From Salisapilia sapeloensis CBS 127946 (lineage: Eukaryota > Protista > Oomycota): a stretch of DNA of 64,000 nucleotides. Under the pieces are notes generated by a model. That model was not told the DNA's origin, did no database searches, and was given only the letters and a program-made list of their open reading frames with translations. Positions 33,924 to 59,539 of the stretch are shown in pieces; the stretch's first letter is position 1, and each line of letters opens with the position of its first letter. The translations under genes and the position numbers were made by a program. Location: NCBI GenBank assembly GCA_023334545.1, contig JAADVB010000075.1:8198-72197 (forward strand). The letters run 5' to 3'.

Positions 33924-36070
33924 ATGGAGACTCGATGCATCTGCCCCACCTGCGCTAAACCTTCCGACAATGACCTGTGTGTCGACTGTCAGACGCCAGT
34001 ACGGCCGCCAACCGTGTTTGACTGCGCTCGACTCGGCTGGGTCACGACGTTCCAGCAGCTAGTCGACGAACAGGTACCGTCCTGAGCTTTTCTTCGGCTA
34101 TCTACTGCAGACACTTATTTAAGGCATAGGGCACTGCGTTTGATGTGAATGCAAGAGAGGGGGAGGCACAAGCCACTGTGCTCCACTACGCAGCTAGTAG
34201 CAGAAGAATAGGCATATATAAGTAGGTAGGTACGAGTATCATGTACGTCTCTGCTTCTCACATGTCCTGTAGGTACATTTTCACCCACGAAAGTCTCAAG
34301 GACCAGGTGCAGGTGGACGCTAGAGCAGGAAAAGACCAGACGACGCCATTGCATTGGGCAGTGCGATACAACTACATCTACGGCGTCGAGATCTTGTACC
34401 AGCATGGAGCTGACATCCATCGTCGAGACGCAAGCAGACTCACGCCATTCCTCACCTCCATACGTGTACGTCTAATAGCTAGATTCAATGGCAGGAGTAG
34501 AGCCTCATCTTCGAACAGGACGGCTTTCCTCTCATTGCTGCCTACTTGATCGCCAAAGGCGCAGACGTCGACACTAGAGTCGATGGTACCCTTCATCAGC
34601 CATACCGACGCCTACTAGTCCTTATACAATGACCACTTGCTGTAGACACCTACATGCAAACGGCACTCATCCTACTATGCACGCCCAAGTCTTTTCACCT
34701 CGACACCTTCCGCATGCTCCTGAGTCTGCGCATCGACAAAGACGCACAGGACAGTCTTGGAAACACAGGTACCTTCGACACTCCTCTCTACTTTACGACG
34801 CTCATGTCTAGTCGGTGTTCATAGCTCTGCACTACGCCGCCGCCAATAACCTAGGTCCGGCAGTACGCATCCTTCTCGACAGACAAGCGTCCACGACACT
34901 GCGCAACAAGGATGGGAAAACCGCATTAGACCTGGCAGTCGTCAAACTACCTCCAAAGGCAGCAACCTTACGACTGCTGGGAGACGACAAGCGCCTACGA
35001 GTCGCAGCCTCCACACTCGGACTCTCCGTACGTCCACTCCCTCCATGTCCATCATTTCATTTGAATCTAATCGCTCCCAACAGAAGTCTACGCTGGACCA
35101 GTACCTCTACAAGACCTCCTTCTTCATCCCGTGGCTTTTGCTTCCTCTCTTCTACGTCGTCCTCTCCGTCTTCAACGGATACAATGTCCTATTAGCTGAA
35201 CTCCTTCTCCTATGCACTGCCGCCGGACTCCTCTGGATCTTCCAGACCGGAGCCTACGGAGACAGTCGGAAGGCTGCTGCACTCATGTTCGGAGTCAACG
35301 TAGCCTCCATCTTCTGGCTCTTGGTCTCCTACCCTACCTTTGCCATCGCTGCCAATGTCTCTCTCGGATTCCACATAGCCTTAGCTCTGTCCTCCATCGC
35401 CATGGTCTTTTTCCTCTACAAGTCCATTGTAGTCGACTCTGGCACCGTCCGCACGACGTACGAGGAGAAACTTGGAAACATCGAGACGCTCGTCGAGTCC
35501 AAACGACCGGTGGAAACCAAACTCTGTCTCTCCTGTCTGCATCAACGACCTCTACGTGCCAAGCACTGTGCTGAACTAGACGCATGCATCTCTCGCTTCG
35601 ACCACTACTGTCCCTTTGTCGCCAACGCCGTCGGACTGGATAACCATCGATACTTTTTCGGCTTCCTCTTCTTCGCTGTCACCAGCATATCGCTTGAGAC
35701 ACTCGTGTGCTGGTGGTACGCCACGCAGAATAATCTCTTTTCGTCGTCAGAAGGCATGTGGCATACGATCTGGAGCCTCGTGCACTACGAACCGCTCCTT
35801 TCGTGTGTCATGACGCTCGACATCCTTCACCTGTGTTGGATCGAATACCTCCTCCTGTTCAACGTCTACCTCCTAGTCGCAGACCTGACAACGAATGAAG
35901 TAGTGAAGAATGAAAACAAGGACAGAGTTTACTCGCAAGGCATCCTTCAGAACGCCATCAACTTTTTCCGACTCAAGAACGCTCAGCAGGTCGACTGGAA
36001 GAAACTGCATCGGCTAGAAGAGTTCTCTGCTTCCATTGATAAGCACAACAACAAAGATAAACACTTGTGA
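33924..36070 (+). CDS. Ankyrin-repeat S-palmitoyltransferase (Akr1/ZDHHC17/TIP1-like), DHYC variant
   Basis: Ankyrin exons (DQTTPLHWAVRYN, ALHYAAANN, NKDGKTALDLA), TM helices, CLSCLHQRPLRAKHCAELDACISRFDHYCPFVANAVG (35600-35611) and TTNE motif. Confidence 0.92.
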
Positions 36071-36094
36071 TCCCACATGCGTGTCTCTATTCCT

Positions 36095-37345
36095 CTACAT
36101 GACGCGCTCCAAACATCGCAGTCGAGCGCTTCTAGACCGAGGGTTCGCCTCCATCTCCTCCTTGCTCGCTTTCATAGCCTTCCGCTTCACCAACCGATAC
36201 ACCTCCCCTCCGTCCAAGTCCTCTCCGCCACTATCATCGTCCAACTCTTCATCGCTGTCTTCCTCGTCACTGTCCTCGCTTTCCTTTCCTTCCTCATCCT
36301 ACAGAGCACAATATCAGCAAAACAATTACTTCTGCCAAGCAGCATGATAAGCATACGAGAGCTCGAAAGAGTTCCTTGATGGGCCGATCCTCGAGCGAGT
36401 GGAAAGCAATCGTACACAAGCGCCCTCCAGGTGCGAGATGATGGACGAGCGAATCGACACCGTCCTGCACGTGCTGCAGCTCTTCATTCACGTAAATCCG
36501 GAGCGCCTGGAAACACTTGGTGGCCGGATGCGTCTTGCTCTTCCGCGCCTTGATCCGCTTGGACCGGAACGCTGTGCGTTCAATGCAAGTGCGGAGGTCC
36601 GTCGTGGTTACGAATGGTCCTTTGCCACGACTCCGCTCTTGCACAATGGCTCGGGCGTACTCTTTCGCTGCCTGCTCTTCTCCAAACTCTCGAAAGATCT
36701 ACAATCCCTCGTCTTACTCGCTGCATATCACATAGGTAGAAGGTCATGTACCTTGGTAAGCTGGACTTCTGATAGCGTATTAACGGCGTCGGCTGCTGTC
36801 ATCTTGTCCGATCGCTGGTCGAATCGCATATCGAGCGGTCCATCGCGCAAAAAGCTAAACCCTCGGCTCGGTTCATCCAAGTGGAAGCTATTGGCGCCCA
36901 AGTCCACGAGGATGCCATCGACTTCCAATGGAAAGTCGTGCTGCTCAATATGGTCCGCCAGGTCCGCGTAGGAGCCGAGCGCAAAGCGCACACGGGGCGC
37001 ATACGGTTTCAGATTCTCTTGTGCAATGGCCAGTACCTATCAATACCCAGGTCACGTGACGTCTTTGCCCTAGATAAATACACGGAAAGCCACCTCTGGG
37101 TCTCGGTCGATGCAGAGCAGTTGGGCGTCCTGGTGCTTGTCTAAGAGCGCTTTGCTGTGTCCTCCAAACCCGACGGTGCCGTCGACGTAGTGCGTCCCGT
37201 GGTCTTTCGCCCAGAGCCCCACCACCTGTTCGCACAGCACAGGCACATGCACTGGCACATCGGCACTAGCGTCGGACGTGAAGCACCGTCTAGACGACTG
37301 CAAGTGGCGTAGCAAGGTAGATCGGAAGTAGGTGGGTGTTCTCAT
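36095..37345 (-). CDS. rsmH: Mitochondrial rRNA m4C methyltransferase RsmH/MraW (METTL15)
   Basis: Presequence, HVPVL, YVDGTVGFGGHS, IDRDPE, DGILVDLGANSFHLD..RGFSF..DGPLDMRFD, HPATKCFQALRIYVNEEL, FHSLEDR and NPRSRSARLR in the last exon. Confidence 0.95.
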
Positions 37346-37451
37346 GAAAGTAGAATGAAAAGAATGACTGGATGCAAGTAAAAGCCCTCGAGAGCATGGT
37401 CACGTGTGCCAAAACTGTCGCTCTAGTTGAATTCGTTAGGTGTCTTCCTAT

Positions 37452-39779
37452 CTACACACTTGGCCTCGCCATCCACGACTCATACAGCGGCTGATGAGCG
37501 CCTCGTGGATGCATCAGATGCAGCGTCTCGTGCTTCTCCACATGCATCGGCAGGCCAAGAGGTTTCCAAATGTGCGTCGAGGATCTCCGCATGCCACACA
37601 CCTGCGCCACGACCTTCTCCAGCTCCTGCTCCGTCAGGTGCGCGCCTAGCTGTACCATGGCAACGTCGTGCTTGGCGGCAGCGACGTAGCGTAAGATGCC
37701 TCTCTCGAGCAGGTACTCGACGGCCTGCTTCATGGTCTCGCTGCACAGGGCTTCTGCGTGCTGGAGCTGGTGGGAAGACAGGAGAGCCTTGGCCAGGAGC
37801 TGCGTCTGCCGAACGAGGTCGCCGACAGACATGTTGTCTATCGAGTGGGAAGCCATCGGTCGTAGGCTCTGGAGACACAGCCAGAGGGAGTCTACCAGCG
37901 GCCACGAGAGCGCCAAGATGAAGCTAACGAGTCTGCTCTTGCGCCACTTGTTCAGTCGGACGAGGACGAAGGAGTGGCTTGAGTAAGCATTCCCAAAGAC
38001 GTCTGGGCAGTGCGTCTGGAGCTGCTCTAGTCTGTCTGCCAAGTCGACGTCCTGGTGGTGACAGAGGTGGCGGAGGTAGGTCCAGAAGGAAGAGGCTTTG
38101 TGCAATAGAGAGCTGGTGGATATGCTGACCTGGTCCTGCGTGAAGATGGTGGAGACGTGGTCTGGCAGGTGTCTCTGGAGGAGGATCGAGTGGATGGCCG
38201 TGACAATCGCCATGTCGGGTAGAAAGGCATGCAGAAGCTGGTTTCGGTAGAAGTTGAGCACGAGCGCTTGCGTCGGAGAGCCCAGGTGACTCTGTACGAC
38301 GCCATTGGACTGCACTGGCACCTTGAGCACCGACAGGGCGTGGTCTACCACCTCGTCACTCGAGACGTTGCTGACGTTTACCTGTCTCTCTTCTAGTTCC
38401 TGCAGCAGCCACTGGCAGGAGGAGTGAATCATGTCTTTCGTGGCATACGCCCTCCTCCACATGAGGACAGAGGAGACGACCGAGGTGCTCGTGATGGTCC
38501 CCGTCTCTTGCATCCGGACGCCCAGCGTCTTGGCAGTCTCGAGCAAGTTGAACCTAGCGTCCAGAGCGAGAGGCTGTCCGAAGCGGACGTAGGCGTGTCC
38601 GCAGCGGAGGAAGAAGATGCTCCAGATGGACTTGAGCAGCCCTAGCAGAGTCTCCGGCGCCTTTGGCTTCCCCAGCACCTGGGCAGCATAGTCCTCCACC
38701 TCGAGCACCTTGTCGTAGTCGAGCGAAATGGGGACAAGAAGCATCTTTCGCCCTCTTGCATTCTCGTTGGACGTAGGAAGATACCTCTGCAAGAGAGACA
38801 GAAAGCCCATGCGCAGCTGATGCACTCGGCCGGAGCGAGACCGACCTCCTTCCAGAAACACCTCGATCGGATTCCCGTCCGCCATCAGCTCGTGCACGTA
38901 CGTGTCCAAGACGTCCTTGTAGAGCTGGTCGTCTCGGAAGGACCGACGCATGAAGAAGCTCCCGTTGGCTCGCAGGAAGCGCCCAACCAGAGGCAAGTCG
39001 AGGTTGTTCCCGGCCGCGATGCGAGGGAGAGGAATGCCGTAGCCAAAGCACAGGTAGCTCACGATCAGATAGTCCAGGTGTGTCTTGTGCGTAGGACAGA
39101 AGACGACGCACGTGCCGTCGTCCGCCTGCTCCAGAGCTTCCTGTAGGCCACGCAAAGAACCTGCATCGACGTGCAGGCCGTCGAACAAGAGTCGCCATGT
39201 CTTCGTCAGGATGTACCCCAGGCATCGTACAGCCGGTAGGAGCATATCCGACCGCAGAGCCTTTAGAATCTTGGAGACTCGGGCAGGCTCTCGACCGAGT
39301 CTGGCCTGCACCTGCTCCTCGTGCCGAGATGGAGACGACGGACGGTGGCCATGCAAATTGTACTCACATCCGCCACGGAGGCTAAAGACAACGTCCTGAA
39401 GCAATCGGCGGACGTCGATGCAGCTAGGACTATCCAAAGTCTGGCGCTTGGCGGCGCATCGTCTCCGAGAGCCAACGGACGCCAGAAGCCACGAGGTCTG
39501 CATGACGTCCACCATGTCTGTCGCTTTCAAATGCTCTCCACTGTGACAAGTAGCACAAGTGCCGCTGCTGCAGAGACTCATGGGCGTCGAGAGCTCCGTG
39601 TCGTCGTCGTCGTCGCCACCGGCGAGCTCTCGTCGGCCCTCGCCCATCTTCTGGTGGTCTCCTTTTCCCCACATTGCCACATCTTTGAAGTTGCCTCTCT
39701 CCACCCGATGCCATCGACCGCCACTGCGATCTTGAAAGGGAGCGTCACGCCGCGACGAGCGACCGGTCTCACCTGCCAT
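37452..39779 (-). CDS. Glycerol-3-phosphate / DHAP O-acyltransferase (GPAT/GNPAT family)
   Basis: PTHKTHLDYL (HX4D), IAAGNNL, GSFFMRRSF, FLEGGRSRSG and LVPISLDYDK. Confidence 0.92.
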   Translation of the reverse strand: MAGETGRSSRRDAPFQDRSGGRWHRVERGNFKDVAMWGKGDHQKMGEGRRELAGGDDDDDTELSTPMSLCSSGTCATCHSGEHLKATDMVDVMQTSWLLASVGSRRRCAAKRQTLDSPSCIDVRRLLQDVVFSLRGGCEYNLHGHRPSSPSRHEEQVQARLGREPARVSKILKALRSDMLLPAVRCLGYILTKTWRLLFDGLHVDAGSLRGLQEALEQADDGTCVVFCPTHKTHLDYLIVSYLCFGYGIPLPRIAAGNNLDLPLVGRFLRANGSFFMRRSFRDDQLYKDVLDTYVHELMADGNPIEVFLEGGRSRSGRVHQLRMGFLSLLQRYLPTSNENARGRKMLLVPISLDYDKVLEVEDYAAQVLGKPKAPETLLGLLKSIWSIFFLRCGHAYVRFGQPLALDARFNLLETAKTLGVRMQETGTITSTSVVSSVLMWRRAYATKDMIHSSCQWLLQELEERQVNVSNVSSDEVVDHALSVLKVPVQSNGVVQSHLGSPTQALVLNFYRNQLLHAFLPDMAIVTAIHSILLQRHLPDHVSTIFTQDQVSISTSSLLHKASSFWTYLRHLCHHQDVDLADRLEQLQTHCPDVFGNAYSSHSFVLVRLNKWRKSRLVSFILALSWPLVDSLWLCLQSLRPMASHSIDNMSVGDLVRQTQLLAKALLSSHQLQHAEALCSETMKQAVEYLLERGILRYVAAAKHDVAMVQLGAHLTEQELEKVVAQVCGMRRSSTHIWKPLGLPMHVEKHETLHLMHPRGAHQPLYESWMARPSV

Positions 39780-39928: not shown

Positions 39929-41859
39929 ATGTCGTCGATGTCGACACGGGAAGCTTCGGCCGGATACGGCTCGTGCCAGCAGGATCGGTCTCGACCATCT
40001 GGGAAGCGGATCAAGTTCCGAGACTTGCAAGAGGTAAGCCATCCCTAGTCACCCGGCATCATCCATTCCCTTCTCCTCGCGCTTCAACGATCCATCCGCT
40101 GATCCGCCTTTACCCTCCTCCTCTAGCTCTCCATACGCACGTGCGACTTGCCACAAGTCCGGTCGGACCAGCGACAGCGACATTCCGCCCCCGCAGACAC
40201 CTCCAGGATGACGCCCGTTACAGACCTTCCGGATTCGGTGCAGACGCCCAGGACGCCCATCCAGCCGAGCTCCGGCAAGAAGCGGCGGAGGCGGACCGCT
40301 GCCCAGATCGACCGCAAGTTCAAATGCCAAGTCCATGGGTGCTCGAAGGTATTCTTCTTCTACCCCCATAACTCCCTCTCTTCTCACGACACCATTGACG
40401 ACGCAGGCGTACGGGTCCGAAGGCTCTCTTAAGCAGCACGTCAAGCTCAAGCACGATGGAAAGCCAGATACGAGGACGACGCCCAAGACCCTCAAAGTCA
40501 CGCCCGTACGTTGAGACGCTCCCTCTTATCTTTCACATTCACATGACGCTCATGTGTGCATAGCAAGTGCAGACGGATGCCATGCACAACCTCTCGAGCC
40601 ACCACGCCTTCCATCTCTTCTCGGCTACACCGTCCGGCACGCGCAATGTCACCATCCGACCAGCCACGCACAGTCCAAGTCTAGGCCACGAGCCCTCGCC
40701 CCACTCGACGCCCACCACGCCTCCTGCCTTCCCACCCGCCTCCTGGCCTGGCACAGTCCACTTTGCTCTGACTAGTGTAGCAGAACCTTTGAATGGTACA
40801 ACCCTTGGCCATCGTGCTCGGTCCTACTCGATGCCATCCTCCCCGCCAAGTGTGTTTCATCATGTTCCACTGATAGTACTCGATAGTCTCATACTCTATG
40901 CTCTAGGTACCTACACGCCCACTGCGAAAAGCCATGCTGAACCACGCAGCCGAGCTGTCCGATCCAGCAAGACCAGTGCCACGCCACGGCCAAAGGGTAA
41001 GTCGTATCGTTTGAAAACACGGTCCCAGTCAGACTCCGTGTCGGATCCACATGCGTTCGACCTTCCGTCGGAGCTGTCGGAGCAACTGTGCAGTTTCAGT
41101 GACGACCCAGACCTCAGTCCCTGGGATGTCGACGCCCCTATCATGATCTCGTCTCCCTCCGATGCCGTCTCTCGAGAGCACAGCCGATCGCTCGACTGGA
41201 CAATGTCCGGAGCCAGTCTCACACCAGACGAAGAGGTCTTTGACAAGGACATTCTGTCCGTTCTGGCCACATGTGAAGCAGAAGACTCCTCTTCAGAGCG
41301 TGCTTCTACGAAAGAAGAGCCATGTGAGTCTCTTTGGGACTCATCCATCGCGTCAGACAATATTGACGTCTTCATGTCGGAAACCCTCTCGACGGGCTTG
41401 ATGGAGACGGCTCACTTGACCAGCGTCATCACGCCGACGGTGGATGTCGACATCAAGGCCCCTTGGATGGTACCCAACGAGCTCTCTTTGCCCACTCTCC
41501 CGTCTTCTTCTAACCCGTCCACCTTCCTCTTTTCCGAAGACCACTTGAAAGACGCTAGTTGGAAACATACAGCTCAAACTACATGTCCAGTGCCACTTTC
41601 AACCAGTATGAACGGACCGGACGAGGAAATGCCAGCCATTGCCGAAGACAAACCCTTCTTCACCAAGGAAGGCTTCAAGCTAGATGCAATGGCGTGGGAT
41701 CATGACAGACGCCCCTCCAGCAGCTCCACGCGTGACAGCAAGCAGATTGACTCGGCTATTAGCAATGTGCTCGACATGGATCTGAACGATGACACGGCTG
41801 GTCCATCCAGTGATACGGAGAACTCTTGCCCTTTCGCAGACATATTATTATACGATTGA
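39929..41859 (+). CDS. Single C2H2 zinc-finger transcription factor with a long disordered acidic C-terminus
   Basis: Splicing gives KKRRRRTAAQIDRKFKCQVHGCSK|AYGSEGSLKQHVKLKH (C-x4-C..H-x4-H), continuing into ORF 40567-41859. The start codon is inferred. Confidence 0.8.
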
Positions 41860-42029
41860 GAGTGCTAGCTCCATGCGCTCATGTGCAGCCACTGCATACA
41901 TGTCAACCACCACTGTGCGAATCACAAGAGAGCTTTTTATGTCTGGCAGTTGGAACCTTTATCTTTGTATCTGTCTCAATCTACTCTTGTATCAGTTACA
42001 CACCATGGCGTGATCTCTTGTGTGTCTAC

Positions 42030-45000
42030 CGTTTTACAATTAAAAAGCTGGATATATGTAATTCCGAGCAAGCATTAAAAGTTTGTTGTTGTTGCAAAGG
42101 GCTAAAAGTTTATTAAGCAAGCTTATATTAGAAGACGACGTCCTTTGGAGTCCACTGAAGGTGGCCTCTACCATTCCGAAAAATGGGATGCTGGTTGCTC
42201 AGTACATTCGGAGCCCTTGGACTGGAGAACTGCCATAAGCGCGTTTCAGAGCTGACGCTTCCGATACGGCAGTTCCTTGATTTTCGTTTTTTGGAGTCCG
42301 TTTTGAAGCGAGCAAACACTAGCACTGGCAAGAGGGCACGTATACTTTACTCACTGACGTTTATAAGTAGTGCAGACTCTATTTTGTCAATATATTCAAC
42401 TACTGGGCCTACCATAAAGTTTCATAATATTGAAGAGGAAAGTTTGTGGTATATCCGTTACGTGGTTCTTGAATCTATGTAGCAATCGCTAATATCCATC
42501 ACCTTATTAGATACATCGTAAACGACAACAACCAGTTATTAATCGAATGTTGGTTGCCCTCGAAGACGGTTGCCGTAGCTCAAGCAGACCCTGGCACAAT
42601 TAACGTAAAATTTATTATCATGGGCAACGTGTAGGAATAAAAGAGTTGAAATAAAATATGGTAAAACAGTCATTTGTTGATGGTTTGCATCACTCGCGCA
42701 TTAGACGATTATCCTTACATTAGAGGGCGGTATTCAATCTGTTTGTAGACTGCATACTTTTGCACGAGTCATAACTATGGCACTGGTGCAGCTTCTTTTA
42801 AAATCATGAAATAAACCTGTCGCGTATGATTTTAAATCTAATTCCTCTAGTCGAAACAGGGAAAGTATGTTTGGAACGCTTGGGAATGCTTAGGAGAGCA
42901 CTGAGGGGTAGAAGTTACGGTGATGTCGGATAACTCCGAGGCAGGACAAACGTGGTTGACTTCATGTTCATGTACACTGGGCCGCTGCACAGGTCGAACG
43001 TAGATAGCCAAGTGTGATCATAGATCCTATAGTACAGGGAGATATTAGCAAGTGGTCTCGCGTGCGCGTGCGTTCGACAGTGAAAATGGACGTACTTCGA
43101 GGTGGCACAGTAGTCGTCGATTTGCAACAGCGAAGCTTAGTAGAGCTGCAAGATGATGTGTTCGGGACTTATCTTGGAAAATGAGTGATGATTTATAATC
43201 ATACCGCACCCTTCTACGCAACAATTCGCATTTGGTCTCATTGTGCAAATTTATGAGGCGTACAAACTTACAGCCACAGTTTTTCATGCTATCAACGAGA
43301 CAGCATCGTTTGACCGTCTAACGAGCCCTAAAGTAATGATAGATAGAAGAAGTCAGAACAGTTTTATGACCGAAGAAGAATCACACTCAAGCGAGCTCAA
43401 GCACCTACTGCACAAAGCGTCCCGTAAATTCATTTAACTAAGCACATAAGACTGTAGTTCTTAGCTATGGATCGAAGAACCTTCTGTACAAAGTGCACGG
43501 AAGACAGAAGTACCCATCATAGAAATTTGTAGCTGTTACACGAGTTACAGAGACATCAAATGCATATATAGAAGTCAATACGGTTGCAGCTGGGCTTTAT
43601 ACCGTACTGTCATAGTATAGAACGCAACCATACCCAATCAATGGCTTGACAGTTGACTGCACTTCTCTAGCACTAAAAATAGCTTTGTAAGTAAGTTTTT
43701 TCGTATCTATTTTGTGGATAAAGTTATTTTTAAACGGTAAAATACTTTAGTCCAAAACCTTCTGTCCAAAGCAGTACAGACTTGTAACACTATTTTCATG
43801 AGGCAGTATAAACTTACTAAACCCAATTGTTAATTAACCGCAGATATTGTACATATATCAACTAAATCTCATATTAAATCACAATAAAAATAAAACTTTG
43901 TGCTAGTGTAAACAACTTTTCTATAAGAACTTCATCTTGCATGCATCATATGCATTTCCTAGTTATAAATATGTATGAGAAAATTTATTAAAACATGCAA
44001 AATTTAGACACATTACTTAAAATAAAGCAAATGATATGTTAAACAAAGTAACGTCAAATTAAAAAAAGGGAAATTGAAAAGAAGACAAATAAGTTCCAAA
44101 AACAAGTTTTGACATATACGCAAATACTTTTAAAATTTACAGCAAACAAAATTTTTAGCTCTATAAACGAATTAAACGCAAGATCTAAACAAACAGATTG
44201 TTTGTGTTTGCATTTGGTAAGATTTTAGTCTGTATAAAAAATGAATTTTTTATTGTTTTATATCTGACGTAGCGACCACATAAGCAAAGTTTTTATATTA
44301 ATTTTGTTTTACAAATGCATTGATATTTAACATGACATGAATTAAATTGTGTGTAGAGCAAATTTTTATATAAAAATCGTATAATTTTACACACAGTTAA
44401 TTTAACCAAAATTAATGCAAACTGAAGTATCAGATTGAAAACACAAAAAACAATTTGTATTAAAAACTATAAACAACTTCAAATAAAAACACAAGTTACT
44501 TTAACGTACAAAAACAAGCTAAATAAGACTTTACAATGTATAAAATTTTTGTATCAAAGCTATTGTTTCGTAAAAAATCATATATTTTAACTTTAGAAAA
44601 AATACAAATACAACGTTGTAGGTATTTTGTTAAAGGTGAATAAAAATTACTCTAAATACGATAACAAATAGACTATACATAACATAATTATTAAGGCACT
44701 TAACAACATAACAAAAGTTAATAAAAACTAGAAATTACATGAAGACAGTATGTTTTGAATCAAACATTGTATTTTTGTATTCAAAGCCCTCTATCTATCA
44801 CTAAGCAATTTTACAATTACTTTTTAATACAATGTAAAGAATAGATCCAACTACTGTTTTAATTAAACAAAATTTGTGACTTTGCATGATGCTTATAACT
44901 ATTTATATATCGTATCATCTATTCATCATACATAAACAGTTGTAGAAAGTGCTTTTCTGAATAACCTTTAACATTTAGTGTTTCTTAAAAACCTTTGTGA

Positions 45001-48000
45001 TATATTGTATATAAACATTACAACAAATTTATTTATATTAAATATTATCCTTAGCCTAAATTCATTAAAAACTTTAATAAAAATTGTAGAGCTTACGTAA
45101 TAAATTTGGAAATTATTCATTGTATCCAAAAATTATTTTTTACATATATTGTAGCGTACAGCAAACATCTCATGTTCAAATTTTTTCTCTTAAATTCCTC
45201 TATGAATGCGCTTTATAAATATGCAGAACACTATGGACGACAACAACGTATAATGAATGTGTCAAAAAGTTTACATTAATAGCAGAAAACCGTCTGTAAA
45301 GAGTATATTTTTAAATCATAAAAAGACAGTAAAAAATACTTGTAGGCTTGTCCACCGCTACATGTGTATTATATTGTTATGAAAAAAAAATTATCATGCT
45401 ATTATCATATTTGATTATATAGTCAAGCACTACAATGTTTTATATATTTAATTAAATTTATCATGATATCGATTCCTGAAAGCATAAAACAAAAAAGGCA
45501 AATTTGGAGGAAACTACTTTAAACTTAAATAATACTTAATCTTTTTAACTTTAGTTTTATGACTTAAAAATTATGTTTATGTATAAAAGAAAAGTTTGTA
45601 TACATTGTTGTAATATTTTATATGTGAGCAATAAAAGATCGATTTTTTTATTATATCTGACATTGAATGTAGAAAAGATTTTCTCTTTATCTATACATTT
45701 AATGTTATATACCTTTTTTACATTTTTATTATTTTAAAAGATACATAATAAATAAGTTCGTTCGTTTAATTTCTATAATTATTAAATGATATTATTTAGC
45801 AGCATACAGACACTAACCTGTTTAATTTTAAAATTTATAAGTTTATATTTGAGATTTCTTACTAATAGTGATATTGAGATTTGTACTTTGAGTACTAGTT
45901 TTCAATATGTTTTGGTTAAATATTGTTCTTAACGTAAGTGTTATGCTCCTTATAGCATTAATTTAATTATCTAGTCAGTTTATAGTATTTAAAACATAAA
46001 AAACTTGTGAGAATATATAATATATATTCAATGGTAGTTTATATACTTGTTTTAGCACAAAAGTTTTATTTTCAAATGATAAGTACATGCTATTTTTTTG
46101 TTAATAGTTTGAAGCTGTGTGTTTAAATGTTATCTCCATATAAGGAAGAAACCTTATCAATCTCAATATTAAGTTTTTTATTTTTTTTATAGTACAAAAT
46201 GTGTATTAAACTTATATTTTTTCACGTAAAATAATAAATCTGCTAAAAAAAAATTGCATACAAAGAAGCGTTCTTTGTTGTCGTTATTTTCTAGCTGATC
46301 TATATGTGCTAAGTGTTATAATATCACATGTTTGTCATAGCCTAATATGAAATGTTTTTTTTGGTCTAGCTTTTTTTAACTTTGTATAAGAATATCTATT
46401 TATGAAAATTTTCTAAAAACTTTACAACGCAGTTTATACGATTTCGACATTTTTATTTAAGCAAACAAAGAATACTTTGTAGAAAAACACGTTGATTGCT
46501 TATATTTATTACTGTTGAAAGAAAATACAACATTTTATAAATATAGATAGTCTATTTGACTAAATAATTACAGTTGACATTTTAGGCGTTGAGAAAACGC
46601 ACTAAAATTTTGTAAATTTGTAGCTGTCGAAAAATTTTGCTCCGTATCAATTTGTAAAGGATACACAAGCAGCGTTAGGTTTAATTTAGGTTCGTCCAAA
46701 CAGAGGTCTGGATATTTGACAAGCTTAAGCTCAATTGAATACAGTGTATTTTTACTCATATCTTTACATTCGTTGTTGTAAAATATGTTCTCTTATATTC
46801 ATGCAGTATCTATCTTTTTAATGCTTATTGTGCAACTAAGTGTGTTCATTTCGTAGCACAAGACGACCAAATCGACGTAGGAACACGTCGAAGGAACTAC
46901 ACTCTTACACAATTTGCTGTTTAAATCATGTTATTACAATCTGCAATTGATGTGTTGACAGTATTTTTGATTACCAAGGCGCTGGCGAAATCAAATTCAA
47001 TGCACGAGTACATCATTCTAGAGTACGTTTGTGTTCATTATAAACTCTGTCAATAATGAGGCGACATTTCGCTAGTATTAAGGCAGCAGATATCTGTTAT
47101 GCATGCAAGCGACACTAAGACAGTATCATCTAGAGCAATGTACGTTCTGTTCAAATGTCTTGATTCAAATGCTTTTTATAGTCAACGTGTCTGACAATGG
47201 TCTTGACTGTAAACAATACAATTGGCTTGTGGTCATGAGTAGATAGTTTGATTTAGCGAATGCTGTCGTCTTCTGTAATTCAAAACAGTGTCAGAATGCG
47301 GTGATTACTCGCTCGGATTCGTATCTGCAACGGCAAACAACATTGCCAGATGAAGCATATCCGTCACCTACATTCTGATAGTCTGACAGTAATCCTATCT
47401 CTTACATCGATGTACCACAAAGAGTATCCTTTAATATTCGTGAACACTAATATTAATGTAGTCTTAATGCTGTATTTCACAGCGTGCAGAGATTTGAAGA
47501 GTCGATGTATATTTAGCGTTGATACCAAACCTGCTAAAGCACTCTACTTCAGCTGCAATCGCTAGAGTTGATAGACGCCAAAAACTGTATTTATATGCTG
47601 GATAAAACTTGCTTTAGAAATTGTTCATACAACAGTCGTTGATGTCGTGTGCTTACATTTGAACCACCGTGATCGTTCGCTAATTACTTTGACAGGTACT
47701 GCAACCTTTTCTAGGCTTACTAATTAATCAGCAAGGTTAAGCAGCTCTTCAATTGCCGCTACGCGCGATATTGAGCTTAAATAGGTTAGTAAGCTCACAA
47801 ATTCAATTCTGTTATATACTTCATCATGTTGAATCCCGGAGGTCTCTATCCTACAACATCATCTAGGACGAGTACTCCTACCAGCTTAGTGCGTGCTCTC
47901 TATTTTGTACTTGCACTGAGATCGTGTTGGCGAAAGTTTATATAAGCAGTTTTCGAGCATCATCTTTTTGCTGCATTTGTCTATACGTGGTACAATTCAG

Positions 48001-48700
48001 GAAAAATCTACCTATACACACCTAGCAATATGTTTGACATTGAATAATGTGCTCAATCGTAGTGTGCCATCAACACAATGCTTGCAAACGCATAGCGATC
48101 CGGCGTTTTTAAAGGTAGGTCTTTTACCTTTGCTTGATAGCATGCGGATTTTGCTTTCACATATTATGGAGCTTTAGTTTGGCTTCTCGATTCGGCGAGC
48201 TGGTTTTCCTTTAGTTGTGCGATTGCTTTTGCATTCGATTGTGCCAAGTTGCAGGAAGAAAGGTATTATTAAAGGTATAAGTTATAATGAGAGTAAATGC
48301 CATGCGACTATAATAGAATTGCGTGCCTGTTGACAGTGGTTGGTCGTCAAAGTCGTAGAACCAAGGACTACATGCTGCACCCAACCGACGTATGAATTAA
48401 AAGCACTAGGCAGCTCTTGGTACGATAGCAAGCATAGACAAGGTAACTTTTGTGGGTATAGTACACCATGTCACCACCATTACACAGAAATAGGCGCAAA
48501 AGTCACTTGGATGAACGCTGCGGTTAAGCATAAAGCAAGACAGCACAAAGATTACATGTACCGTCACTCGAGTCTGGTAATCTAGCTCTCACCTTTACAT
48601 ACAATGCTCTACTTCAGACTTTCCGAATCAGATGCATCAAATTCAAGCAGCCATTTATACCAATCAAAACGCTTGAAAAGGCTCTTATAATCTTGCAGTC
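42030..48700. other. Gene-free AT-rich island with a ~23% GC core (43600-46800) and intermediate-GC shoulders; candidate centromere or replication origin
   Basis: Only short ORFs (none over 100 aa) in ~6.7 kb of an otherwise packed genome. Hand counts: 66 G+C of 300 at 44401-44700 and 69 of 300 at 45841-46140. Strand skew inverts mid-island. The functional label is inference. Confidence 0.85.
48660..48670 (+). promoter_or_regulatory. CCAAT-box-like motif upstream of EEP gene 1
   Basis: CCAATCAAAAC, identical to the 11-mer at 23214-23224, ~130 bp upstream of ATG 48797. Confidence 0.45.
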
Positions 48701-48796
48701 TCTAATAAATACGTCAATTAAGGCAAACGACCCTACATTCCATAGAAACACTGCTATTCCTACGAAGAAGATTGCGCCTAAAACAAGCGTTTTAAC

Positions 48797-49879
48797 ATGA
48801 CCGAGATCGGATCGTTCCTGCCGACGACCTCATCCTCCGCCCCTCGCAACCCGTACGCCCGTCATACGAAGAGCGCAGGCCAAACTCCGTCGTCCAAGGT
48901 CGTGCTGGGTGTTATCGCAGCCTTCACAGTCGGATGTGTCGTTTTGTGGAGAACCTCTTCGATGCCATCGATGACGTCGATGACCACGGACTCCAAGGTC
49001 GCTGTGCCTCGGTTCAAAGGAGCTTCGGCAGTCGATCCGCACCAACTAGGTATCATGACCTTCAACCTCCGTTTTGCAGGTGCAAATGACGGACATAATG
49101 GATGGAGATACCGAAAGGATCACGTGGCAAATATCATCAATCGGTACCATCCGGCCATCATGGGGACGCAGGAGGGACTGAAGGATCAGCTAGCAGACCT
49201 CCACGACCTCCTCTCTCACCCATATGAGCGGTACGGTATCGAGCGAGAGACGAACGGAGAGTTCGAACAGATCTTCTACGACACAAGTGTCGTCGAGTGG
49301 CTCGACGGAGGGAACTTTTGGCTCTCGGACTCACCCGACACTCCAGGCACTAAAGGATGGGATGCAGCCTGCGTTAGATTGGTAACCTGGTGCAAGTTCC
49401 GACTGCATGCGACCGGCCAGGAGCTCTTCTTTTTCAACACGCAGCTGGATCACGAAGGCGCTAGGGCGAGAACCATGGGCTCCCAGCTGCTCCACGAGCG
49501 CATGCAGGAGATCGCTGGCGCCGACTCGGCTGTCTTCCTCGTCGGTGACTTTAACACGTACCGTCACACGAGTACCTACAGCTACTTGACGGCAGCCAAG
49601 GAAGGTCCGAAGCTGTTGGAGGCGTGGCCTGAAGCAGAGAACCAGATCGGAGACGTGTCGTACACATATCATGGGTGGGCCGGCATACAGAATGACGGGG
49701 AGAAGACTGCGAAACGCGCTGCGAACCACATCGACTGGATCTTGTATCGTCCCAAGATGAGAGTTCTGTCAACGGAAGTGATCACGGAGTCTCGGAATAG
49801 TCGGTATCCGTCGGACCACTATCCAATCCATGCTGAGGTCATGTTTCCACCGGTTACACAAGTAGCTCCGTCGTCGTAG
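48797..49879 (+). CDS. Endonuclease/exonuclease/phosphatase (EEP) family hydrolase with an N-terminal TM anchor, copy 1
   Basis: IMTFNLRF, MGTQEG, GGNFWLSDSPD, GWDAACVRLVTW, GDFN, IDWILY and YPSDHYP. Intronless. Confidence 0.92.
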   Translation: MTEIGSFLPTTSSSAPRNPYARHTKSAGQTPSSKVVLGVIAAFTVGCVVLWRTSSMPSMTSMTTDSKVAVPRFKGASAVDPHQLGIMTFNLRFAGANDGHNGWRYRKDHVANIINRYHPAIMGTQEGLKDQLADLHDLLSHPYERYGIERETNGEFEQIFYDTSVVEWLDGGNFWLSDSPDTPGTKGWDAACVRLVTWCKFRLHATGQELFFFNTQLDHEGARARTMGSQLLHERMQEIAGADSAVFLVGDFNTYRHTSTYSYLTAAKEGPKLLEAWPEAENQIGDVSYTYHGWAGIQNDGEKTAKRAANHIDWILYRPKMRVLSTEVITESRNSRYPSDHYPIHAEVMFPPVTQVAPSS

Positions 49880-49925
49880 AAAAAAAAAACTTTTTTTTCC
49901 ATTTTAAATTTTTTTTCGATTCGAT

Positions 49926-50741
49926 ATGAGCTCCCTGCGGATCATGACGTTTAACCTGCGCTTTGACACGCCACAGGATGGACGGAACCAGTGGGGGCAT
50001 CGACGAGAGCACGTGACAGAGGTCATCGAGCGGTATCATCCGCTCTGCTTCGGGACACAGGAGGGACTAGTCAACCAGCTGGAAGATTTGACACGGTCTC
50101 TCCAGCATCCGTACGAGCGATTCGGAGCGCCTCGGGAGCCCAACTCGGAGCATCAGCAGATCTTCTTTGACACAGACTTTCTGGAAAAGATCGATGGGGA
50201 CACCTTCTGGCTGTCGGACACGCCAGAGAAAGCCGGCACCAAAGGCTGGGATGCGAAGCATGTACGAGTCGCGACGTGGTGCCACCTCCGTCTGATCGCC
50301 ACTGGACACGAGTTCTTCCTCTGCAACACCCAGCTCGATCATATCGGACAAGTCGCTCGATTGGAAGGAGCCAAGCTCATTGCGTCCAAGATGAACGCGA
50401 TAGCAGGAGGGAAGACGCTCTTTATCATCGGAGACTTTAACACGTACCGAGACTCGGACGTCTATCGCTTCTTAACGAAAGACACTACCGGTCCAAAGCT
50501 GTTTGATGCATGGACAGAGACTGATGAGCAGATTGGCGACGTCTCGTGCAGCTTCCACGGATGGGAAGGTGTCGATGGACCGCATGAAAAGGGTGAAAAC
50601 AAGGGCGAGCGCCACATTGACTGGATCCTCTTCCGGCCGAAGATGCAGGTGCTGTCGACGGAAGTTATTACAGAGCATAGAGACGGTCGCTATCCGTCGG
50701 ACCACTATCCGATCCAAGCGGAAATCGATCTGGACGAGTAA
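49926..50741 (+). CDS. EEP family hydrolase, soluble, copy 2
   Basis: LRIMTFNLRF, FGTQEG, GDTFWLSDTP, GWDAKHVRVATW, GDFN, IDWILF and YPSDHYP. Intronless. Confidence 0.92.
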   Translation: MSSLRIMTFNLRFDTPQDGRNQWGHRREHVTEVIERYHPLCFGTQEGLVNQLEDLTRSLQHPYERFGAPREPNSEHQQIFFDTDFLEKIDGDTFWLSDTPEKAGTKGWDAKHVRVATWCHLRLIATGHEFFLCNTQLDHIGQVARLEGAKLIASKMNAIAGGKTLFIIGDFNTYRDSDVYRFLTKDTTGPKLFDAWTETDEQIGDVSCSFHGWEGVDGPHEKGENKGERHIDWILFRPKMQVLSTEVITEHRDGRYPSDHYPIQAEIDLDE

Positions 50742-50775
50742 TGTCAATAACAATCAAAGTCACCTTCCTTTCTAT

Positions 50776-52091
50776 TTAGTTTGCATAACACGACCGAGGG
50801 TACCCGTCGCCATGACGCAGCGTCACACTGTCCAGCGCGACGGTCTCGTGGCCTTTGGTAAAGTCACCAAGGATGCGAATGGACGAGAGGTCCGACAGGA
50901 CGTCGACAAATTCACACTGCGTCGGCTTGGTCCACTCCCGAATGACATTCTGAGGGTCTTTTAGCCATCCAGCATGCTCCTGTAGTGGTAGTCGGAACTG
51001 CTTAGTCGATCCGTCAAACGTGTAGTCCAGAGACATCGGTAGTCCAAGCGTGATGCCGAGGTTGTGATTGCACGATGCGCATTCGAGCAGCACTAGGTTC
51101 ATTCGTCCGTACTTGTTCAGGTTGGCCATATCAAAGTTTCCTTCTGCAGACGACAGGACAAAGTCTAACGACCCACCGTATGCAGCCCACTGGTGTCCGA
51201 GGAACTTGCTCGGAGCTGCAAAGTACCACATCATACTGTCATCCCCCGTGTCGACCTGATGGTGAATGAGATCATCCATGGCGTAGATATAGTAGCTCAA
51301 GAGCCCTCCTGCTCGAGACAGAGGCTGATAAGTTGGCACAGAGTTACCATTTCCTACGACTACCCAGTCTTCAATGTTCACATCGAACGGACTGGAGACC
51401 AAGGAGCTTGTCGTTGTGAGTACAATCATGCCTTCATTCGACACATCGCTCTTGGAGTTAGTTGCTGTATACCGGAACTCTGCATACTGCTCTATGTCAG
51501 AAAGCTGATACTATGAGGATATAGCGAAGCTTGGTACTTTGGTGTGAAGCGGATGCGTATCGTACTGCGGTCTCTTGAATATTACTCGACTCTTACTTCC
51601 TGTCACGACCGTCGGAACAGTGGTAATTGGAACTTGCTCTCGCTTCGGTTCATACCTGCGCAGTCCTCATGAGCAATAATACTAGTGCGACAATCTGGGT
51701 GAAAATGTACCCGTGGATACTGTAGACTTGCGAGAGCTGGTATAGCTGTCCATTCTCAGGTAGCGATGTGATTGTGATGAGCAGCTACAGTATCCTCCAA
51801 ATCGTTAGGTATGCATTACACTTTACCATGCACGTGATTAGCTACCTTGTCACCTGTTTTGTCGTAAGCTTTCAGCATAACTTCTGTCTCGTGCCCAGGT
51901 GCTGCATGATAGACGAGATTGCGGGCGACGGGGCTATTTAATCAGGCAGATAAGCTTTTACATGGACTAATGGACATCTGAAAGAATTTTACTCACGTGT
52001 CTGCCATTGCCAATGGCATGAAGACAATGGACAGTAGGAGTACTATCCAAAGCGTTCGCATCCGACTTTTTGTTCGCCACCGTGGTGCCAT
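50776..52091 (-). CDS. Secreted laminin IV type A (laminin-B) domain protein, multi-exon
   Basis: Signal peptide MAPRWRTKSRMRTLWIVLLLSIVFMPLAMA. WYFAAPSKFLGHQWAAYGGSLDFVL and FVDVLSDLSSIRILG match the laminin-B pattern. Confidence 0.75.
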
Positions 52092-52238
52092 TTGACTCTT
52101 CAGGTAGATGCTGACGCTTTAGCTCGAGACGAGACACCTTCGTTTCCAGTCATGAAACGGGCGTTGAATTCTGGAACGACCTGATGACGAATTATAAATG
52201 CAAGTGCTTACGTCTAATAGGAAGAAGGTTTATTATCT

Positions 52239-54675
52239 CTACTCTGCTCCTACTTCTCCAGCGTATTGGCGTAGTTCGGTCAAAACACCAAGAGCATCGT
52301 TATCAACTGGGTTCTTGTCATTCATTGCGTGGATGCGACCTAGAAGGGTTTCCAGAAGTCGTTCTTGAAAATGTCCATTCACATGCTGGTTGTCTTCTGG
52401 TTTCTCTTGCTGTGTTGTCTCCAAAAACACCTTAAGACCGTCCATCACCTTTGACTCTAGCAGCACTTCATCGCTGATACGCTGCAAGATATAAATGAGA
52501 GCTGTCTCTGTTGGCAGATGACTCGACTGCGTGTTTTGATCGGCTATATCATAAAGATCCGAGAGCCAAAGCTTACCTTGCTTGTCCAGCAGCTCCTGCG
52601 TACTGCCTACATCCGGCAAAAGGTCTGCGAGTACCTCGAGTACCATCTCGCCACTGCACAATACAAGCATTAGACTATTTTAGTCTAAAAGAAAGCAGCT
52701 AGGAAACGTACTTGGTAGACGTAGTGTCCAAGCTAGACTCGGCATAGATGACCGCTAGGCGGAACATGGTCTCGTACAGCTTGTCCATGGCTGGTAGTCG
52801 CCCGTTCTCCCGATAGTATGCCGCGACAACCTCTACACCTCGCCGCTGCATAATCTGAGCGACTTGCAGTAGCATTGCACTAGCCTCCGCTTGTACGGTC
52901 ATGTCCGAGAACCGTTGTACGTGGGGACTAGCAACCGCATCAACTAGGCCCTTGACATGTGGCAAGAGAACTCGATCGAGAGAGCCTCGCATCAAATGCA
53001 TCATCAGTTGCAGCGTACTGCACGTAGCAGTCGGCGTTATCGTAGCCACTGCGTCGTCCTCACCCCGAATACGGGGCAAGAGGATCTTCAAGTATGTGTC
53101 TGGACTCGTGAATCTTCCCACAAGTTCAGCAGCTTCCTCAATGTCCTTCTGAAGCTCCTTGTCTCCCCACACACGCCGTAAGGATGCGACAATAATGTGT
53201 GCATCGACTGTCAGCGTTTCTTCGCAGTAGACGAGGATGGTCTTGAGAAGTCGAGCGGCTCGGACTCGTGTCTGGGACTGCCAATTGGTCAGTTCTCTCA
53301 GCACAGGCTGGAGGAAGCGCCTTGCACGTCCTCTGACGAACAATCTCGTTCCGAGCGACGGGCGCTCGTGGAACGGAGCTGGCAACTGCCCATTGTAATT
53401 GTAGGATGGGTTACGCCCATCAATACCATACTGCTTCATCTCTATGACCTCACTCGCATGCTCCTGCTCATACGTGTTTCCAAGCATTTCTAGCGTCTTC
53501 ATAGCTTGGATAGCAATGTATAGGATCTCGTCGCTCACACCACTGAGTAGATAAGGCAAGAGGCGAGACTCGTGGTCGTATCTGTCCGGCAGCGTCGTGA
53601 TCCAATCGCCGACCATGGCATAGAACGCCTTTCGGACACTACTGTTTGCGTCCTGGTCTAGTCTGGCAAAGTAGTTGACTCGAGTCTCGCCAACGTAAAA
53701 GGCAGCAATCGGGATGACGTTCTCCTCTCGATGTCCGATGAGCTCCACCAAGGTTTCCGTTCCACTGCCTTTGCATTTCTCGACATTGGGACAGCTGAGG
53801 ACCGTCCGAATGCCATTGATAGCGGCCACACGGACTCTGGCGACACGGTGCAGCAAGAGGTGCTTCATGGCTCGGACGATCGCGACGCTAAAGTGCTTCA
53901 TGACCGAGACCATGTGATCACTAATCAAAGCGAGCAAGTGGCAGCTGCGTATATTGACCTCATGATATGGGTCGTGAAGCCCATTGACTAGTACGAGTAT
54001 CATATCGAAGATGTAGGCATGTAGGATGGAGGAGGCGCTATGCGTAAATACATTTTGCAGGATCGTCTCGATCAACTGAAGGAAGAGGAGTCTAATTTCC
54101 TCCGACGGTTCAGTCGGCTTTCGTCGATCCACTTGTTTTTCATCGACGTAGATTCTTCCTCTCTGGAAAGCTTCCTGCAAATACGCATCTCTTGTGAACT
54201 CTTGCATGTTTCCATCGAACGCATACGGACTCTCGATCCGCGAGACGATGGACGGCATCAAGTAAGGTAGGTAGCGCATGATGTCTTGTTCGTTTTGGAA
54301 CGACAAGATGCACAAACGGATACTCACGTCTCTGACTTTTTCAATCGAGTCGTGGAAGCGTTTGAATAGTAACTTGGCGACGACATCGAAGTCGAAGTGT
54401 TGATCCGAGGTTTCCACCAGGATATGCCGCTCGAGAGCGACTGCCGCTTTCTTGCGTACGTTTGGACGATCGTGTGCCATGCGATTGACTTCCAGGTGGA
54501 AGTTGCATGCCGTGGACGACGTACCCACCACACACTCCGTCCCATCTGATGTCGGTTGAGTGTAAGTCGTGTCGGACATGGATTTCCGGAGAACGGCGTC
54601 AGCCTTGGCCGCTCGCGGCTGGGTGTCCGCATCCTGTAGCTCTTGCCATAGCTGGTTGATCCTGTCGTTGGCCAT
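52239..54675 (-). CDS. DNAAF5: Dynein axonemal assembly factor 5 (HEATR2), HEAT repeats
   Basis: EPSEEIRL, DPYHEV, WITTLPDRYDHESRLLPYLLSGVSDE, RPSLGTRLFVR and ELTNWQSQTRVRAARLL. The last exon is 52239-52670. Confidence 0.88.
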
Positions 54676-55280: not shown

Positions 55281-55297
55281 CTCCATTCGCCATTCTT
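55281..55297 (+). promoter_or_regulatory. Oomycete INR+FPR-like core promoter upstream of myosin
   Basis: CTCCATTCGCCATTCTT resembles the YCAYTYY initiator plus flanking element. It lies ~20-35 bp before ATG 55317. Confidence 0.4.
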
Positions 55298-55316
55298 CTT
55301 ATTAAGCACCTACGTC

Positions 55317-59420: not shown

Positions 59421-59539
59421 GCAACGCACTAGAGGCGTTGAACGCTAGCTGACATAGCTGTAGAGACACGTGATAGTCGCAGCCAAGTACGAATCAATCG
59501 AGCTATATTTTGACTTTTTCAAGCCCAAGTTTCCACTGC

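What the first reader, a model, noticed from the sequence alone, without database searches (positions are those of the whole stretch)
43600..46800. Mirror-image strand-skew inversion at the centre of the AT island (origin-like signature)
Seen: the left half of the + strand is A- and C-rich (44401-44700: C=38, G=28, many A runs), and the right half is T- and G-rich (45841-46140: C=26, G=43, many T runs). The switch lies at about 45.3-45.6 kb. Established: a flip from C>G to G>C along the + strand is the polarity left by a fixed bidirectional replication origin, and such skew flips are known at centromere-associated origins in Candida albicans and Yarrowia. Inference: this is a long-lived, constitutively firing origin, which supports the centromere idea from a different measurement than GC content.
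Basis: partly seen in the sequence, partly recalled or inferred. Interest (0 to 1): 0.72.

Follow-up and report, generated by a model that had tools for sequence, protein, structure and literature searches.

The report
Mirror strand skew in AT-rich island
A gene-free, very AT-rich 3-kb island in a compact water-mould (oomycete) genome really does switch from A/C-rich to T/G-rich at its centre, as do the two other complete islands I could read, which fits a small yeast-style centromere or replication start site but does not prove that DNA copying starts there.

Summary
Cumulative GC skew bottoms at 45,247 and cumulative AT skew peaks at 45,532, near the middle of a 3.3-kb core (43,641-46,940, 25% GC) in a 53% GC genome. 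The AT flip is significant on its own (permutation p about 0.001). The GC flip is weak alone (p 0.03-0.09).

The two other complete AT islands I could fetch show the same polarity. Split at their geometric centres, all six arms have T>A and G>=C on the strand read outward. Pooled TA skew is 0.077 (p 1e-10) and pooled GC skew 0.083 (p 7e-5).

The arms share no sequence, so this is not an inverted repeat. I found no motif, gene remnant, RNA family or assembled transcript.

The polarity matches bacterial and human origins and the centromere skews reported for Candida and Yarrowia. That precedent is disputed: a later paper argues that the Candida centromere skews are not replicative and that yeast leading strands are A/C-rich, which would make this pattern a terminus. 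No replication or CENP-A data exist here.

Verdict: a real, recurrent feature; the origin reading is plausible but unproven. Other notes of this scan report the same flip on other pieces of this genome.

The parts
43641..46940 (.). AT-rich core island (about 25% GC; genome about 53%)
   Evidence: 200-nt windows below 33% GC. Whole-island + strand counts are nearly balanced (A 1251, T 1233, C 416, G 400), so the skew is mirror-symmetric and not global.
42400..45250 (+). Left arm: + strand A>T and C>G (T/G-rich on the - strand read outward)
   Evidence: Left of the AT change point at 45,532 the island has A-T = +126, and left of the GC change point at 45,247 it has C-G = +44. Outward TA skew is positive in every 500-nt bin out to 3 kb from the centre.
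45247..45532 (.). Switch zone: cumulative GC-skew minimum (45,247) and cumulative AT-skew maximum (45,532)
   Evidence: It lies at 0.49-0.57 of the island's length. No shared motif, tandem repeat or RNA family is found there.
45533..48400 (+). Right arm: + strand T>A and G>C
   Evidence: Right of the AT change point the island has A-T = -108, and right of the GC change point it has C-G = -28. Outward TA skew stays positive to about 3 kb from the centre.
41860..48735 (.). Gene-free gap that holds the island
   Evidence: No ORF of 100 aa or more. The short ORFs have no Pfam family. No Rfam family. No contig of four probable RNA runs lies on 42,900-48,735.
40582..41859 (+). Left flanking ORF (425 aa, no Pfam family), pointing towards the island
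48797..49879 (+). Right flanking gene (Exo_endo_phos family), pointing away from the island; transcript contigs begin at 48,736-48,797

Best explanation
Shown: the island belongs to a set of sequence-unique, gene-free AT-rich islands of about 3 kb in a compact oomycete genome. In each complete island read, the strand read 5' to 3' away from the centre is enriched in T and G, and the asymmetry spans the whole gene-free gap.

Inferred: a strand-asymmetric process begins at or is centred on the island's middle and has run the same way for a long time. The most likely process is bidirectional replication initiation at a small regional, centromere-like element, with a G/T-rich leading strand as in bacteria and human skew jumps. 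Forks leaving the centre would make the + strand the leading-strand sequence on the right and the lagging-strand sequence on the left. Asymmetric substitution would then build T and G excess on the outward strand in this unconstrained DNA. The island would be of the Candida/Yarrowia kind, where centromere and early origin coincide.
For: - Exact counts and skew extrema at 45,247 and 45,532.
- Change-point tests significant for AT in each of three islands, with the split at 0.45-0.62 of island length.
- With an unbiased split at the geometric centre, all 6 arms have outward T>A and G>=C. Pooled TA skew is 0.077 (p 1.3e-10) and pooled GC skew 0.083 (p 7.3e-5).
- A 1.46-kb all-AT contig fragment also runs from A-rich to T-rich.
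- The outward TA skew continues past the AT core, to about 3 kb from the centre in this window and in the pooled arms. A process that runs outward fits this better than a property of the core alone.
- TA and GC skews have the same sense as the skew direction given for bacterial and human origins (PMC2924309; PMC3459929).
- Koren et al. describe AT skew with a local GC drop and no GC skew at Y. lipolytica centromeres, which were first isolated as origins.
- There is no arm-to-arm or island-to-island homology, no coding remnant, and no transcript contigs although the neighbouring gene is well covered.
Against: - There is no replication timing, nascent-strand, ORC or CENP-A evidence.
- The direction of replication skew in oomycetes is unknown. 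In three yeasts the leading strand is A/C-rich, which would make this a terminus (PMC3459929).
- The same paper argues that the Candida centromere skews are not replicative.
- Third-codon-position skew of the 26 flanking ORFs shows no significant left/right effect (GC3 t = 1.35, AT3 t = -0.48).
- Each skew jumps by about 15-17%, above the 9% reported for S. cerevisiae origins.
Confidence: 0.4

Rival explanations
1. Selected architecture, not mutation. Oriented poly(dA:dT) tracts (A-tracts on the + strand on the left, T-tracts on the right) are kept by selection. Their orientation would organise chromatin symmetrically around a centromere core, for example through directional nucleosome exclusion or remodelling. 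Replication would play no part.
For: The excess lies in runs of 3 or more: on the outward strand the T-run to A-run ratio is 1.5-2.0 for most lengths from 3 to 8 and 1.0 for lengths 1-2. Outside such runs T-A is -26, against +98 +/- 51 in shuffles. The islands share size, composition and symmetry but no sequence, as expected if composition and geometry are what matters.
Against: Shuffled sequences of the same composition already place most of the skew in runs, so the extra concentration is only about 2.4 SD. There is no consistent 10-11 bp or nucleosome-scale periodicity of AA/TT. A G>C skew of equal size accompanies the T>A skew, which tract selection does not predict. The skew continues into the flanks at 38-46% GC.
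Confidence: 0.2
2. Divergent low-level non-coding transcription from the island's centre. The outward strand is then the non-template strand on both arms, and it gains T (and G) through transcription-associated mutation and repair asymmetry, as in mammalian transcription units.
For: In this window the coding strand is T>A at third codon positions (strand coefficient -0.068 for A-T skew, t = -2.9). That is the same sign as the outward strand of the island. The skewed domain ends about where the flanking genes begin.
Against: Four probable RNA runs of one study have no contig on 42,900-48,735, while the adjacent gene is assembled at depth 135-195. Third codon positions show no coding-strand GC skew (coefficient 0.003), yet the island has one (0.083). 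Codon usage confounds the third-position measure.
Confidence: 0.15
3. Fork convergence or pausing at a centromere. If this organism follows the yeast rule (leading strand A/C-rich), the A/C-rich left arm and T/G-rich right arm mean that forks habitually enter the island from both sides and meet at its centre.
For: Leading strands are A/C-rich in S. cerevisiae, K. lactis and C. albicans, and some S. cerevisiae termination sites carry skew jumps (PMC3459929). Centromeres are described as natural fork-stall sites (PMC7025860).
Against: It needs two efficient origins close by on both sides of every island, for which there is no sign. In the yeasts with small regional centromeres that have been studied, the centromere replicates first, not last (PMC2924309).
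Confidence: 0.12
4. No function: chance fluctuation, two decayed convergent genes, or an old inverted duplication whose arms mirror each other.
For: The per-island skew (about 0.08) lies within the range that genic windows reach (sd 0.05, maximum 0.13). The GC flip alone is only marginal in this island.
Against: The polarity is the same for both skews on 6 of 6 arms in three unrelated islands. The best arm-to-arm inverted match is 30 nt at 83% and the longest inverted pairs are 70-80% low-complexity matches. No ORF, Pfam hit or 3-nt periodicity was found. The right neighbour is not convergent.
Confidence: 0.03

Closest known systems
Small regional centromeres with skew flips in the Candida clade and Yarrowia lipolytica (Koren et al. 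2010, PMC2924309; also C. lusitaniae, C. auris relatives, PMC8262905)
   Same: ORF-free unique sequence of a few kb. GC skew changes from negative to positive with an AT skew of reverse sign at the same point. No motif is shared between chromosomes. The Y. lipolytica case (AT skew, little GC skew, local GC drop) is the nearest match in composition.
   Different: The organism is an oomycete, not an ascomycete. The GC-skew jump here is about 17%, against 74% at C. albicans centromeres. Kinetochore binding and early replication were shown there and are untested here. The replicative cause of those skews is itself disputed (PMC3459929).
Short AT-rich centromeres of the diatom Phaeodactylum tricornutum and of Plasmodium falciparum (as summarised in PMC7082073)
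   Same: Short, simple, non-repetitive, strongly AT-rich regions in SAR-supergroup genomes. The diatom is a fellow stramenopile.
   Different: I found no report of a mirror skew for them in the papers read. CENP-A binding or episome maintenance has been shown there and not here.
Phytophthora sojae centromeres (Fang et al. 2020, PMC7082073)
   Same: Same class of organism (oomycete); poorly transcribed.
   Different: Those are 115 to over 270 kb, rich in transposons (a Copia-like element), and have the GC content of the genome. This island is 3.3 kb, unique, 25% GC and carries no transposon trace.
Replication-origin skew jumps of bacteria and human N-domains
   Same: An upward jump of both GC and TA skew at a point, with a G/T-rich outward (leading) strand.
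   Different: Those skews persist or decay over the whole replicon. Here significance is shown only within about 3 kb of the centre, and silent sites of the flanking genes give no significant signal.

Membership tests
Replication-origin skew jump | GC and TA skew change sign at one point, both in the same sense | tested here: met
   Extrema at 45,247 and 45,532. AT p about 0.001 and GC p 0.03-0.09 in this island. Pooled over three islands, both are significant.
Replication-origin skew jump | Skew persists or decays slowly over the replicon, including neutral sites of flanking genes | tested here: inconclusive
   Outward TA skew is positive out to 3 kb. The left/right effect on third-codon skews of 26 ORFs is not significant (GC3 t = 1.35, AT3 t = -0.48).
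Replication-origin skew jump | Known direction of replication skew in the species, and mapped initiation at the site | not testable with these tools
   No replication data are available. The published directions differ between bacteria or human (G/T leading) and yeasts (A/C leading).
Small regional GC-poor centromere (Candida/Yarrowia type) | ORF-free, unique, GC-poor trough of a few kb without shared motif or repeats | tested here: met
Small regional GC-poor centromere (Candida/Yarrowia type) | Exactly one per chromosome | tested here: inconclusive
   The assembly has 1365 contigs. Of the 12 places that lay in longer contigs, two held complete islands.
Small regional GC-poor centromere (Candida/Yarrowia type) | CENP-A/kinetochore occupancy and earliest replication on the chromosome | not testable with these tools
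   No ChIP or replication-timing data.
Inverted-repeat (palindromic) centromere or inverted duplication | Left and right arms are reverse-complement copies of each other | tested here: not met
   Sensitive blastn of arm against arm found at best 30 nt at 83%. The repeat finder gave only 70-81% low-complexity pairs of 38 nt or less.
Oomycete transposon-rich centromere (P. sojae type) | 100-300 kb, Copia-like transposon clusters, GC content like the genome | tested here: not met
   The core is 3.3 kb at 25% GC, with no ORF, Pfam family or repeat. The P. sojae features are from PMC7082073.

The most novel reading that the evidence does not exclude
Each chromosome of this deep-branching oomycete carries one unique AT-rich centromere of about 3 kb that is also a fixed, constitutively firing bidirectional origin. 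The mirror T/G skew would be its mutational footprint. That would be a centromere-origin coupling arrived at independently of the Candida/Yarrowia yeasts, and the opposite of the 100-300 kb transposon centromeres of Phytophthora. It would be readable from sequence alone and could serve as a basis for oomycete episomes.
Probability: 0.3. Interest if true: 0.75.

Novelty: new member of a known kind. Interest (0 to 1): 0.5.

Why it matters
If the islands are centromeres, oomycete centromeres span two extremes: 3-kb AT-rich islands here and 100-300 kb transposon arrays in Phytophthora. A compact, sequence-defined element would then be available for building stable episomes, as was done in diatoms.

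The recurrent mirror skew gives a sequence-only marker for the class and fixes the point to probe. It also bears on an open dispute, namely whether skew flips at small centromeres are footprints of origins or of something else. A second, unrelated lineage with the same signature makes that question testable outside yeasts.

Tried and rejected
- Inverted-repeat arms: sensitive blastn and the repeat finder found only short low-complexity matches.
- Homology or a shared motif between islands: no common 9-mer with 4 or more G/C, and only four trivial AT 11-mers. The TTG(A/T)CAA motif that another note of the scan proposed is not enriched in this island or in L005.
- Decayed genes: no ORF over 63 aa in the core, no Pfam hit, and no 3-nt periodicity.
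- RNA genes and tandem repeats: none.
- Periodicity of AA/TT at 10-11 bp or at nucleosome scale: not consistent across islands.
- Strand-specific dinucleotide context as the source of the skew: TC and GA (o/e 0.69 and 0.76) and CC and GG (0.61 and 0.57) are depleted on both strands almost equally, so context depletion does not explain the skew.
- Skew carried only by homopolymer runs: largely a consequence of composition, with an excess of only about 2.4 SD.
- Skew at silent sites far into the flanks: not significant.
I did not seek the letters by another route.
- Orthologous locus in relatives: the nearest proteins are only 44-48% identical. The Pythium oligandrum locus keeps only GPAT-DHHC linkage, so no orthologous island could be compared.
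Full report
**Context.** The window is G000:C1089:8198-72197 of a 22.4-Mb assembly in 1365 contigs. It is about 53% GC and densely packed with long intron-free ORFs. These include GPAT, a DHHC palmitoyltransferase, two Exo_endo_phos ORFs and a dynein assembly factor. The GPAT protein finds oomycete proteins first, but at only 44-48% identity (Globisporangium, Pythium, Phytophthora). Albugo is at 42% and Saprolegniales at 35-39%. The organism is therefore an oomycete with no close sequenced relative. At 43,641-46,940 GC falls to about 25%.

**The observation.** The cumulative G-C walk over 43.0-47.5 kb falls to a minimum at 45,247 and returns to zero. The cumulative A-T walk climbs to a maximum at 45,532 and falls again. 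A single-change-point test within the island, shuffling blocks of 1, 10 or 25 nt, gave the following:
- The AT flip had p = 0.0005, 0.001 and 0 of 2000 shuffles. A-T is +126 left of the split and -108 right of it.
- The combined A+C versus G+T flip was reached by 0 of 2000 shuffles.
- The GC flip alone had one-sided p of 0.025-0.05.

It is strong for A/T and marginal for G/C in this island taken alone. The whole island is nearly balanced on the + strand (A 1251, T 1233, C 416, G 400), so the pattern is a true mirror.

**Recurrence.** Runs of 22 or more A/T letters served as a strand-neutral marker. I fetched 14 places from the first search, 12 of them in longer contigs and two whole short contigs.
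- Two places held complete islands of the same kind. L005 (C269) has 2,750 nt at 26% GC, and L007 (C358) has 3,260 nt at 24% GC.
- One contig of 1,459 nt (L012, C159) is AT-rich throughout.
- Both complete islands show the same polarity as the window's, and the fragment also runs from A-rich to T-rich.
- Change-point tests for the AT flip gave p of 0.0085 or less in L005 and 0 of 2000 shuffles in L007. The split lies at 0.45-0.62 of island length.

I then split each island at its geometric centre, a choice that does not depend on skew. All six arms have T>A and G>=C on the strand read outward. Pooled TA skew is 0.077 (p = 1.3e-10) and pooled GC skew is 0.083 (p = 7.3e-5). Forty-eight control windows of 3.3 kb from the genic part of the window average zero with sd 0.05-0.06. 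The size of the skew is therefore ordinary. What is not ordinary is that it sits in non-coding DNA, in both skews, with the same sign every time.

I did not look for another route, so the sample is three complete islands and one fragment. Notes from other readers and agents of this scan report the same flip on at least seven other pieces of this genome and estimate 15-21 islands. I treat these as leads only.

**Anatomy.**
- The skew is not limited to the AT core. In this window the outward TA skew is positive in all twelve 500-nt bins out to 3 kb from the centre, then dissolves where the genes begin. Pooled over the six arms it is positive in every 200-nt bin to 3 kb.
- The arms are not copies of each other. 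The best arm-to-arm inverted match is 30 nt at 83%, and the repeat finder gives only low-complexity pairs.
- The islands share no sequence and no motif.
- There is no tandem repeat, no Rfam family, no ORF over 63 aa in the core, no Pfam hit, and no 3-nt periodicity or consistent helical or nucleosomal periodicity.
- The T excess lies in runs of three or more. On the outward strand the T-run to A-run ratio is 1.5-2.0 for most lengths from 3 to 8 and 1.0 for lengths 1-2. Shuffles of the same composition give most of this effect, and the extra concentration is about 2.4 SD.
- The most asymmetric trinucleotides are TTT>AAA, GTT>AAC, TTG>CAA and TGT>ACA, so the outward strand is keto-rich.
- Depletion of C after a pyrimidine (TC and GA o/e 0.69 and 0.76; CC and GG 0.61 and 0.57; background TC 1.29) is nearly equal on both strands. 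It does not account for the skew.

**Transcription.** One search for runs found four small runs of one study, labelled RNA by guess, that hold about 30% of the words of 40.5-50.4 kb. Each run gave one contig of about 2 kb. The contigs begin at 48,736-48,797, that is 0-61 nt upstream of the ATG of the right-hand gene, and run rightward at depth 135-195. Nothing lies on 42,900-48,735. Starts that tight in four runs fit mRNA and not DNA.

The island therefore yields no abundant stable transcript in that study, though unstable RNAs are not excluded. The result also shows that the T-rich right arm lies upstream of a + strand gene. The 'two convergent genes' explanation therefore fails here.

**Flanks.** Third-codon-position skews of 26 ORFs were regressed on gene strand and on side of the island. 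They show no significant side effect (GC3 t = 1.35, AT3 t = -0.48). The + strand GC3 skew is mostly negative at 20-42 kb and slightly positive at 48-64 kb whatever the gene strand. That is in the expected sense, but it was picked out after the fact and rests on few genes. The coding strand is T>A at third positions (t = -2.9), which leaves a transcriptional reading open.

**Literature.**
- Koren et al. 2010 reported that all C. albicans centromeres have a GC skew that changes from negative to positive, with a weaker AT skew of reverse sign. They took G and T to be enriched on the leading strand. They found similar patterns once per chromosome in C. lusitaniae, L. elongisporus and Y. lipolytica. 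The last shows AT skew, no GC skew and a local GC drop (PMC2924309). This is the closest known parallel, and the polarity here is the same.
- Marsolier-Kergoat 2012 objected that the Candida centromere skew is far larger than replicative skews (74% against 9%) and returns to baseline within about 3 kb. The same paper found that skews across inter-origin intervals make the leading strand A/C-rich in C. albicans, as in S. cerevisiae and K. lactis (PMC3459929). Under that rule the pattern here would mark fork convergence.
- The centromeres mapped in P. sojae are 115 to over 270 kb, transposon-rich and of average GC. The diatom P. tricornutum and P. falciparum have short AT-rich ones (PMC7082073).
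- Small AT-rich, ORF-free centromeres with skews are also described for C. auris relatives (PMC8262905). Kinetochore regions of 3-5 kb with an AT-rich core are described for Malassezia (PMC7025860).

**Reading.**
- Shown: a recurrent, centred, mirror-image T/G enrichment of the outward strand across a gene-free, untranscribed, sequence-unique AT island.
- Inferred: a long-lived strand-asymmetric process centred on the island.

My ranking of the causes:
- Bidirectional initiation at a small centromere-like element: about 0.4.
- Selection on the orientation of A/T tracts for chromatin organisation: about 0.2.
- Outward cryptic transcription: about 0.15.
- Fork convergence under a yeast-type skew rule: about 0.12.
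- Chance, decayed genes or an old inverted duplication: about 0.03.

**Verdict.** The origin interpretation is partly supported: the signature is present and not trivially explained, but its cause is untested and the precedent is disputed. As a kind of thing it is a new member of a known kind (small GC-poor regional centromere or origin with mirror skew) in a lineage where that kind has not been described.

Noticed in passing
window 48736-50765: Two adjacent Exo_endo_phos ORFs (48797-49879 and 49926-50741, both +) are covered by single contigs of about 2 kb in all four probable RNA runs. They may be one gene with a short intron or frameshift, or they may be co-transcribed.
   Followed up: no
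window 43402, 43478, 43756, 45288: Four copies of a 16-nt word (reference copy at 43478-43493; the others 81-94% identical). Three lie at the island's left edge and one lies in the switch zone. The word is absent from the other two islands.
   Followed up: partly
window 43641-46940; L005 3491-6240; L007 3401-6660: C after a pyrimidine is depleted on both strands in the islands (TC/GA o/e 0.69/0.76, CC/GG 0.61/0.57). In the genic background TC/GA is over-represented (1.29). GC dinucleotides are enriched in the islands (1.56).
   Followed up: partly
window 20000-42000 versus 48000-64000: Third-codon GC skew on the + strand is mostly negative for ORFs at 20-42 kb and slightly positive for all seven ORFs at 48-64 kb, whatever the gene strand. 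It is positive again at 0-20 kb. This is suggestive of a wider skew domain, but it was picked out after the fact and is not significant in the regression.
   Followed up: partly
G000:C952:1-5200 (not fetched): This contig is packed with A/T runs of 22 or more. The same 23-mer occurs at 119-141 (+) and 5151-5173 (-), so there is an inverted repeat. It is probably mitochondrial DNA or another AT-rich element and not a nuclear island.
   Followed up: no
L016 (Pythium oligandrum SPLM01000147.1:788815-811568) versus window 35045-39779: GPAT and a DHHC gene are linked in both genomes, but the genes between and beyond them differ. Local synteny with Pythium ends before the island.
   Followed up: partly
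window 40582-41859: A 425-aa ORF next to the island has strong C>G skew (-0.19 at all positions), 60% GC3 and no Pfam family.
   Followed up: no
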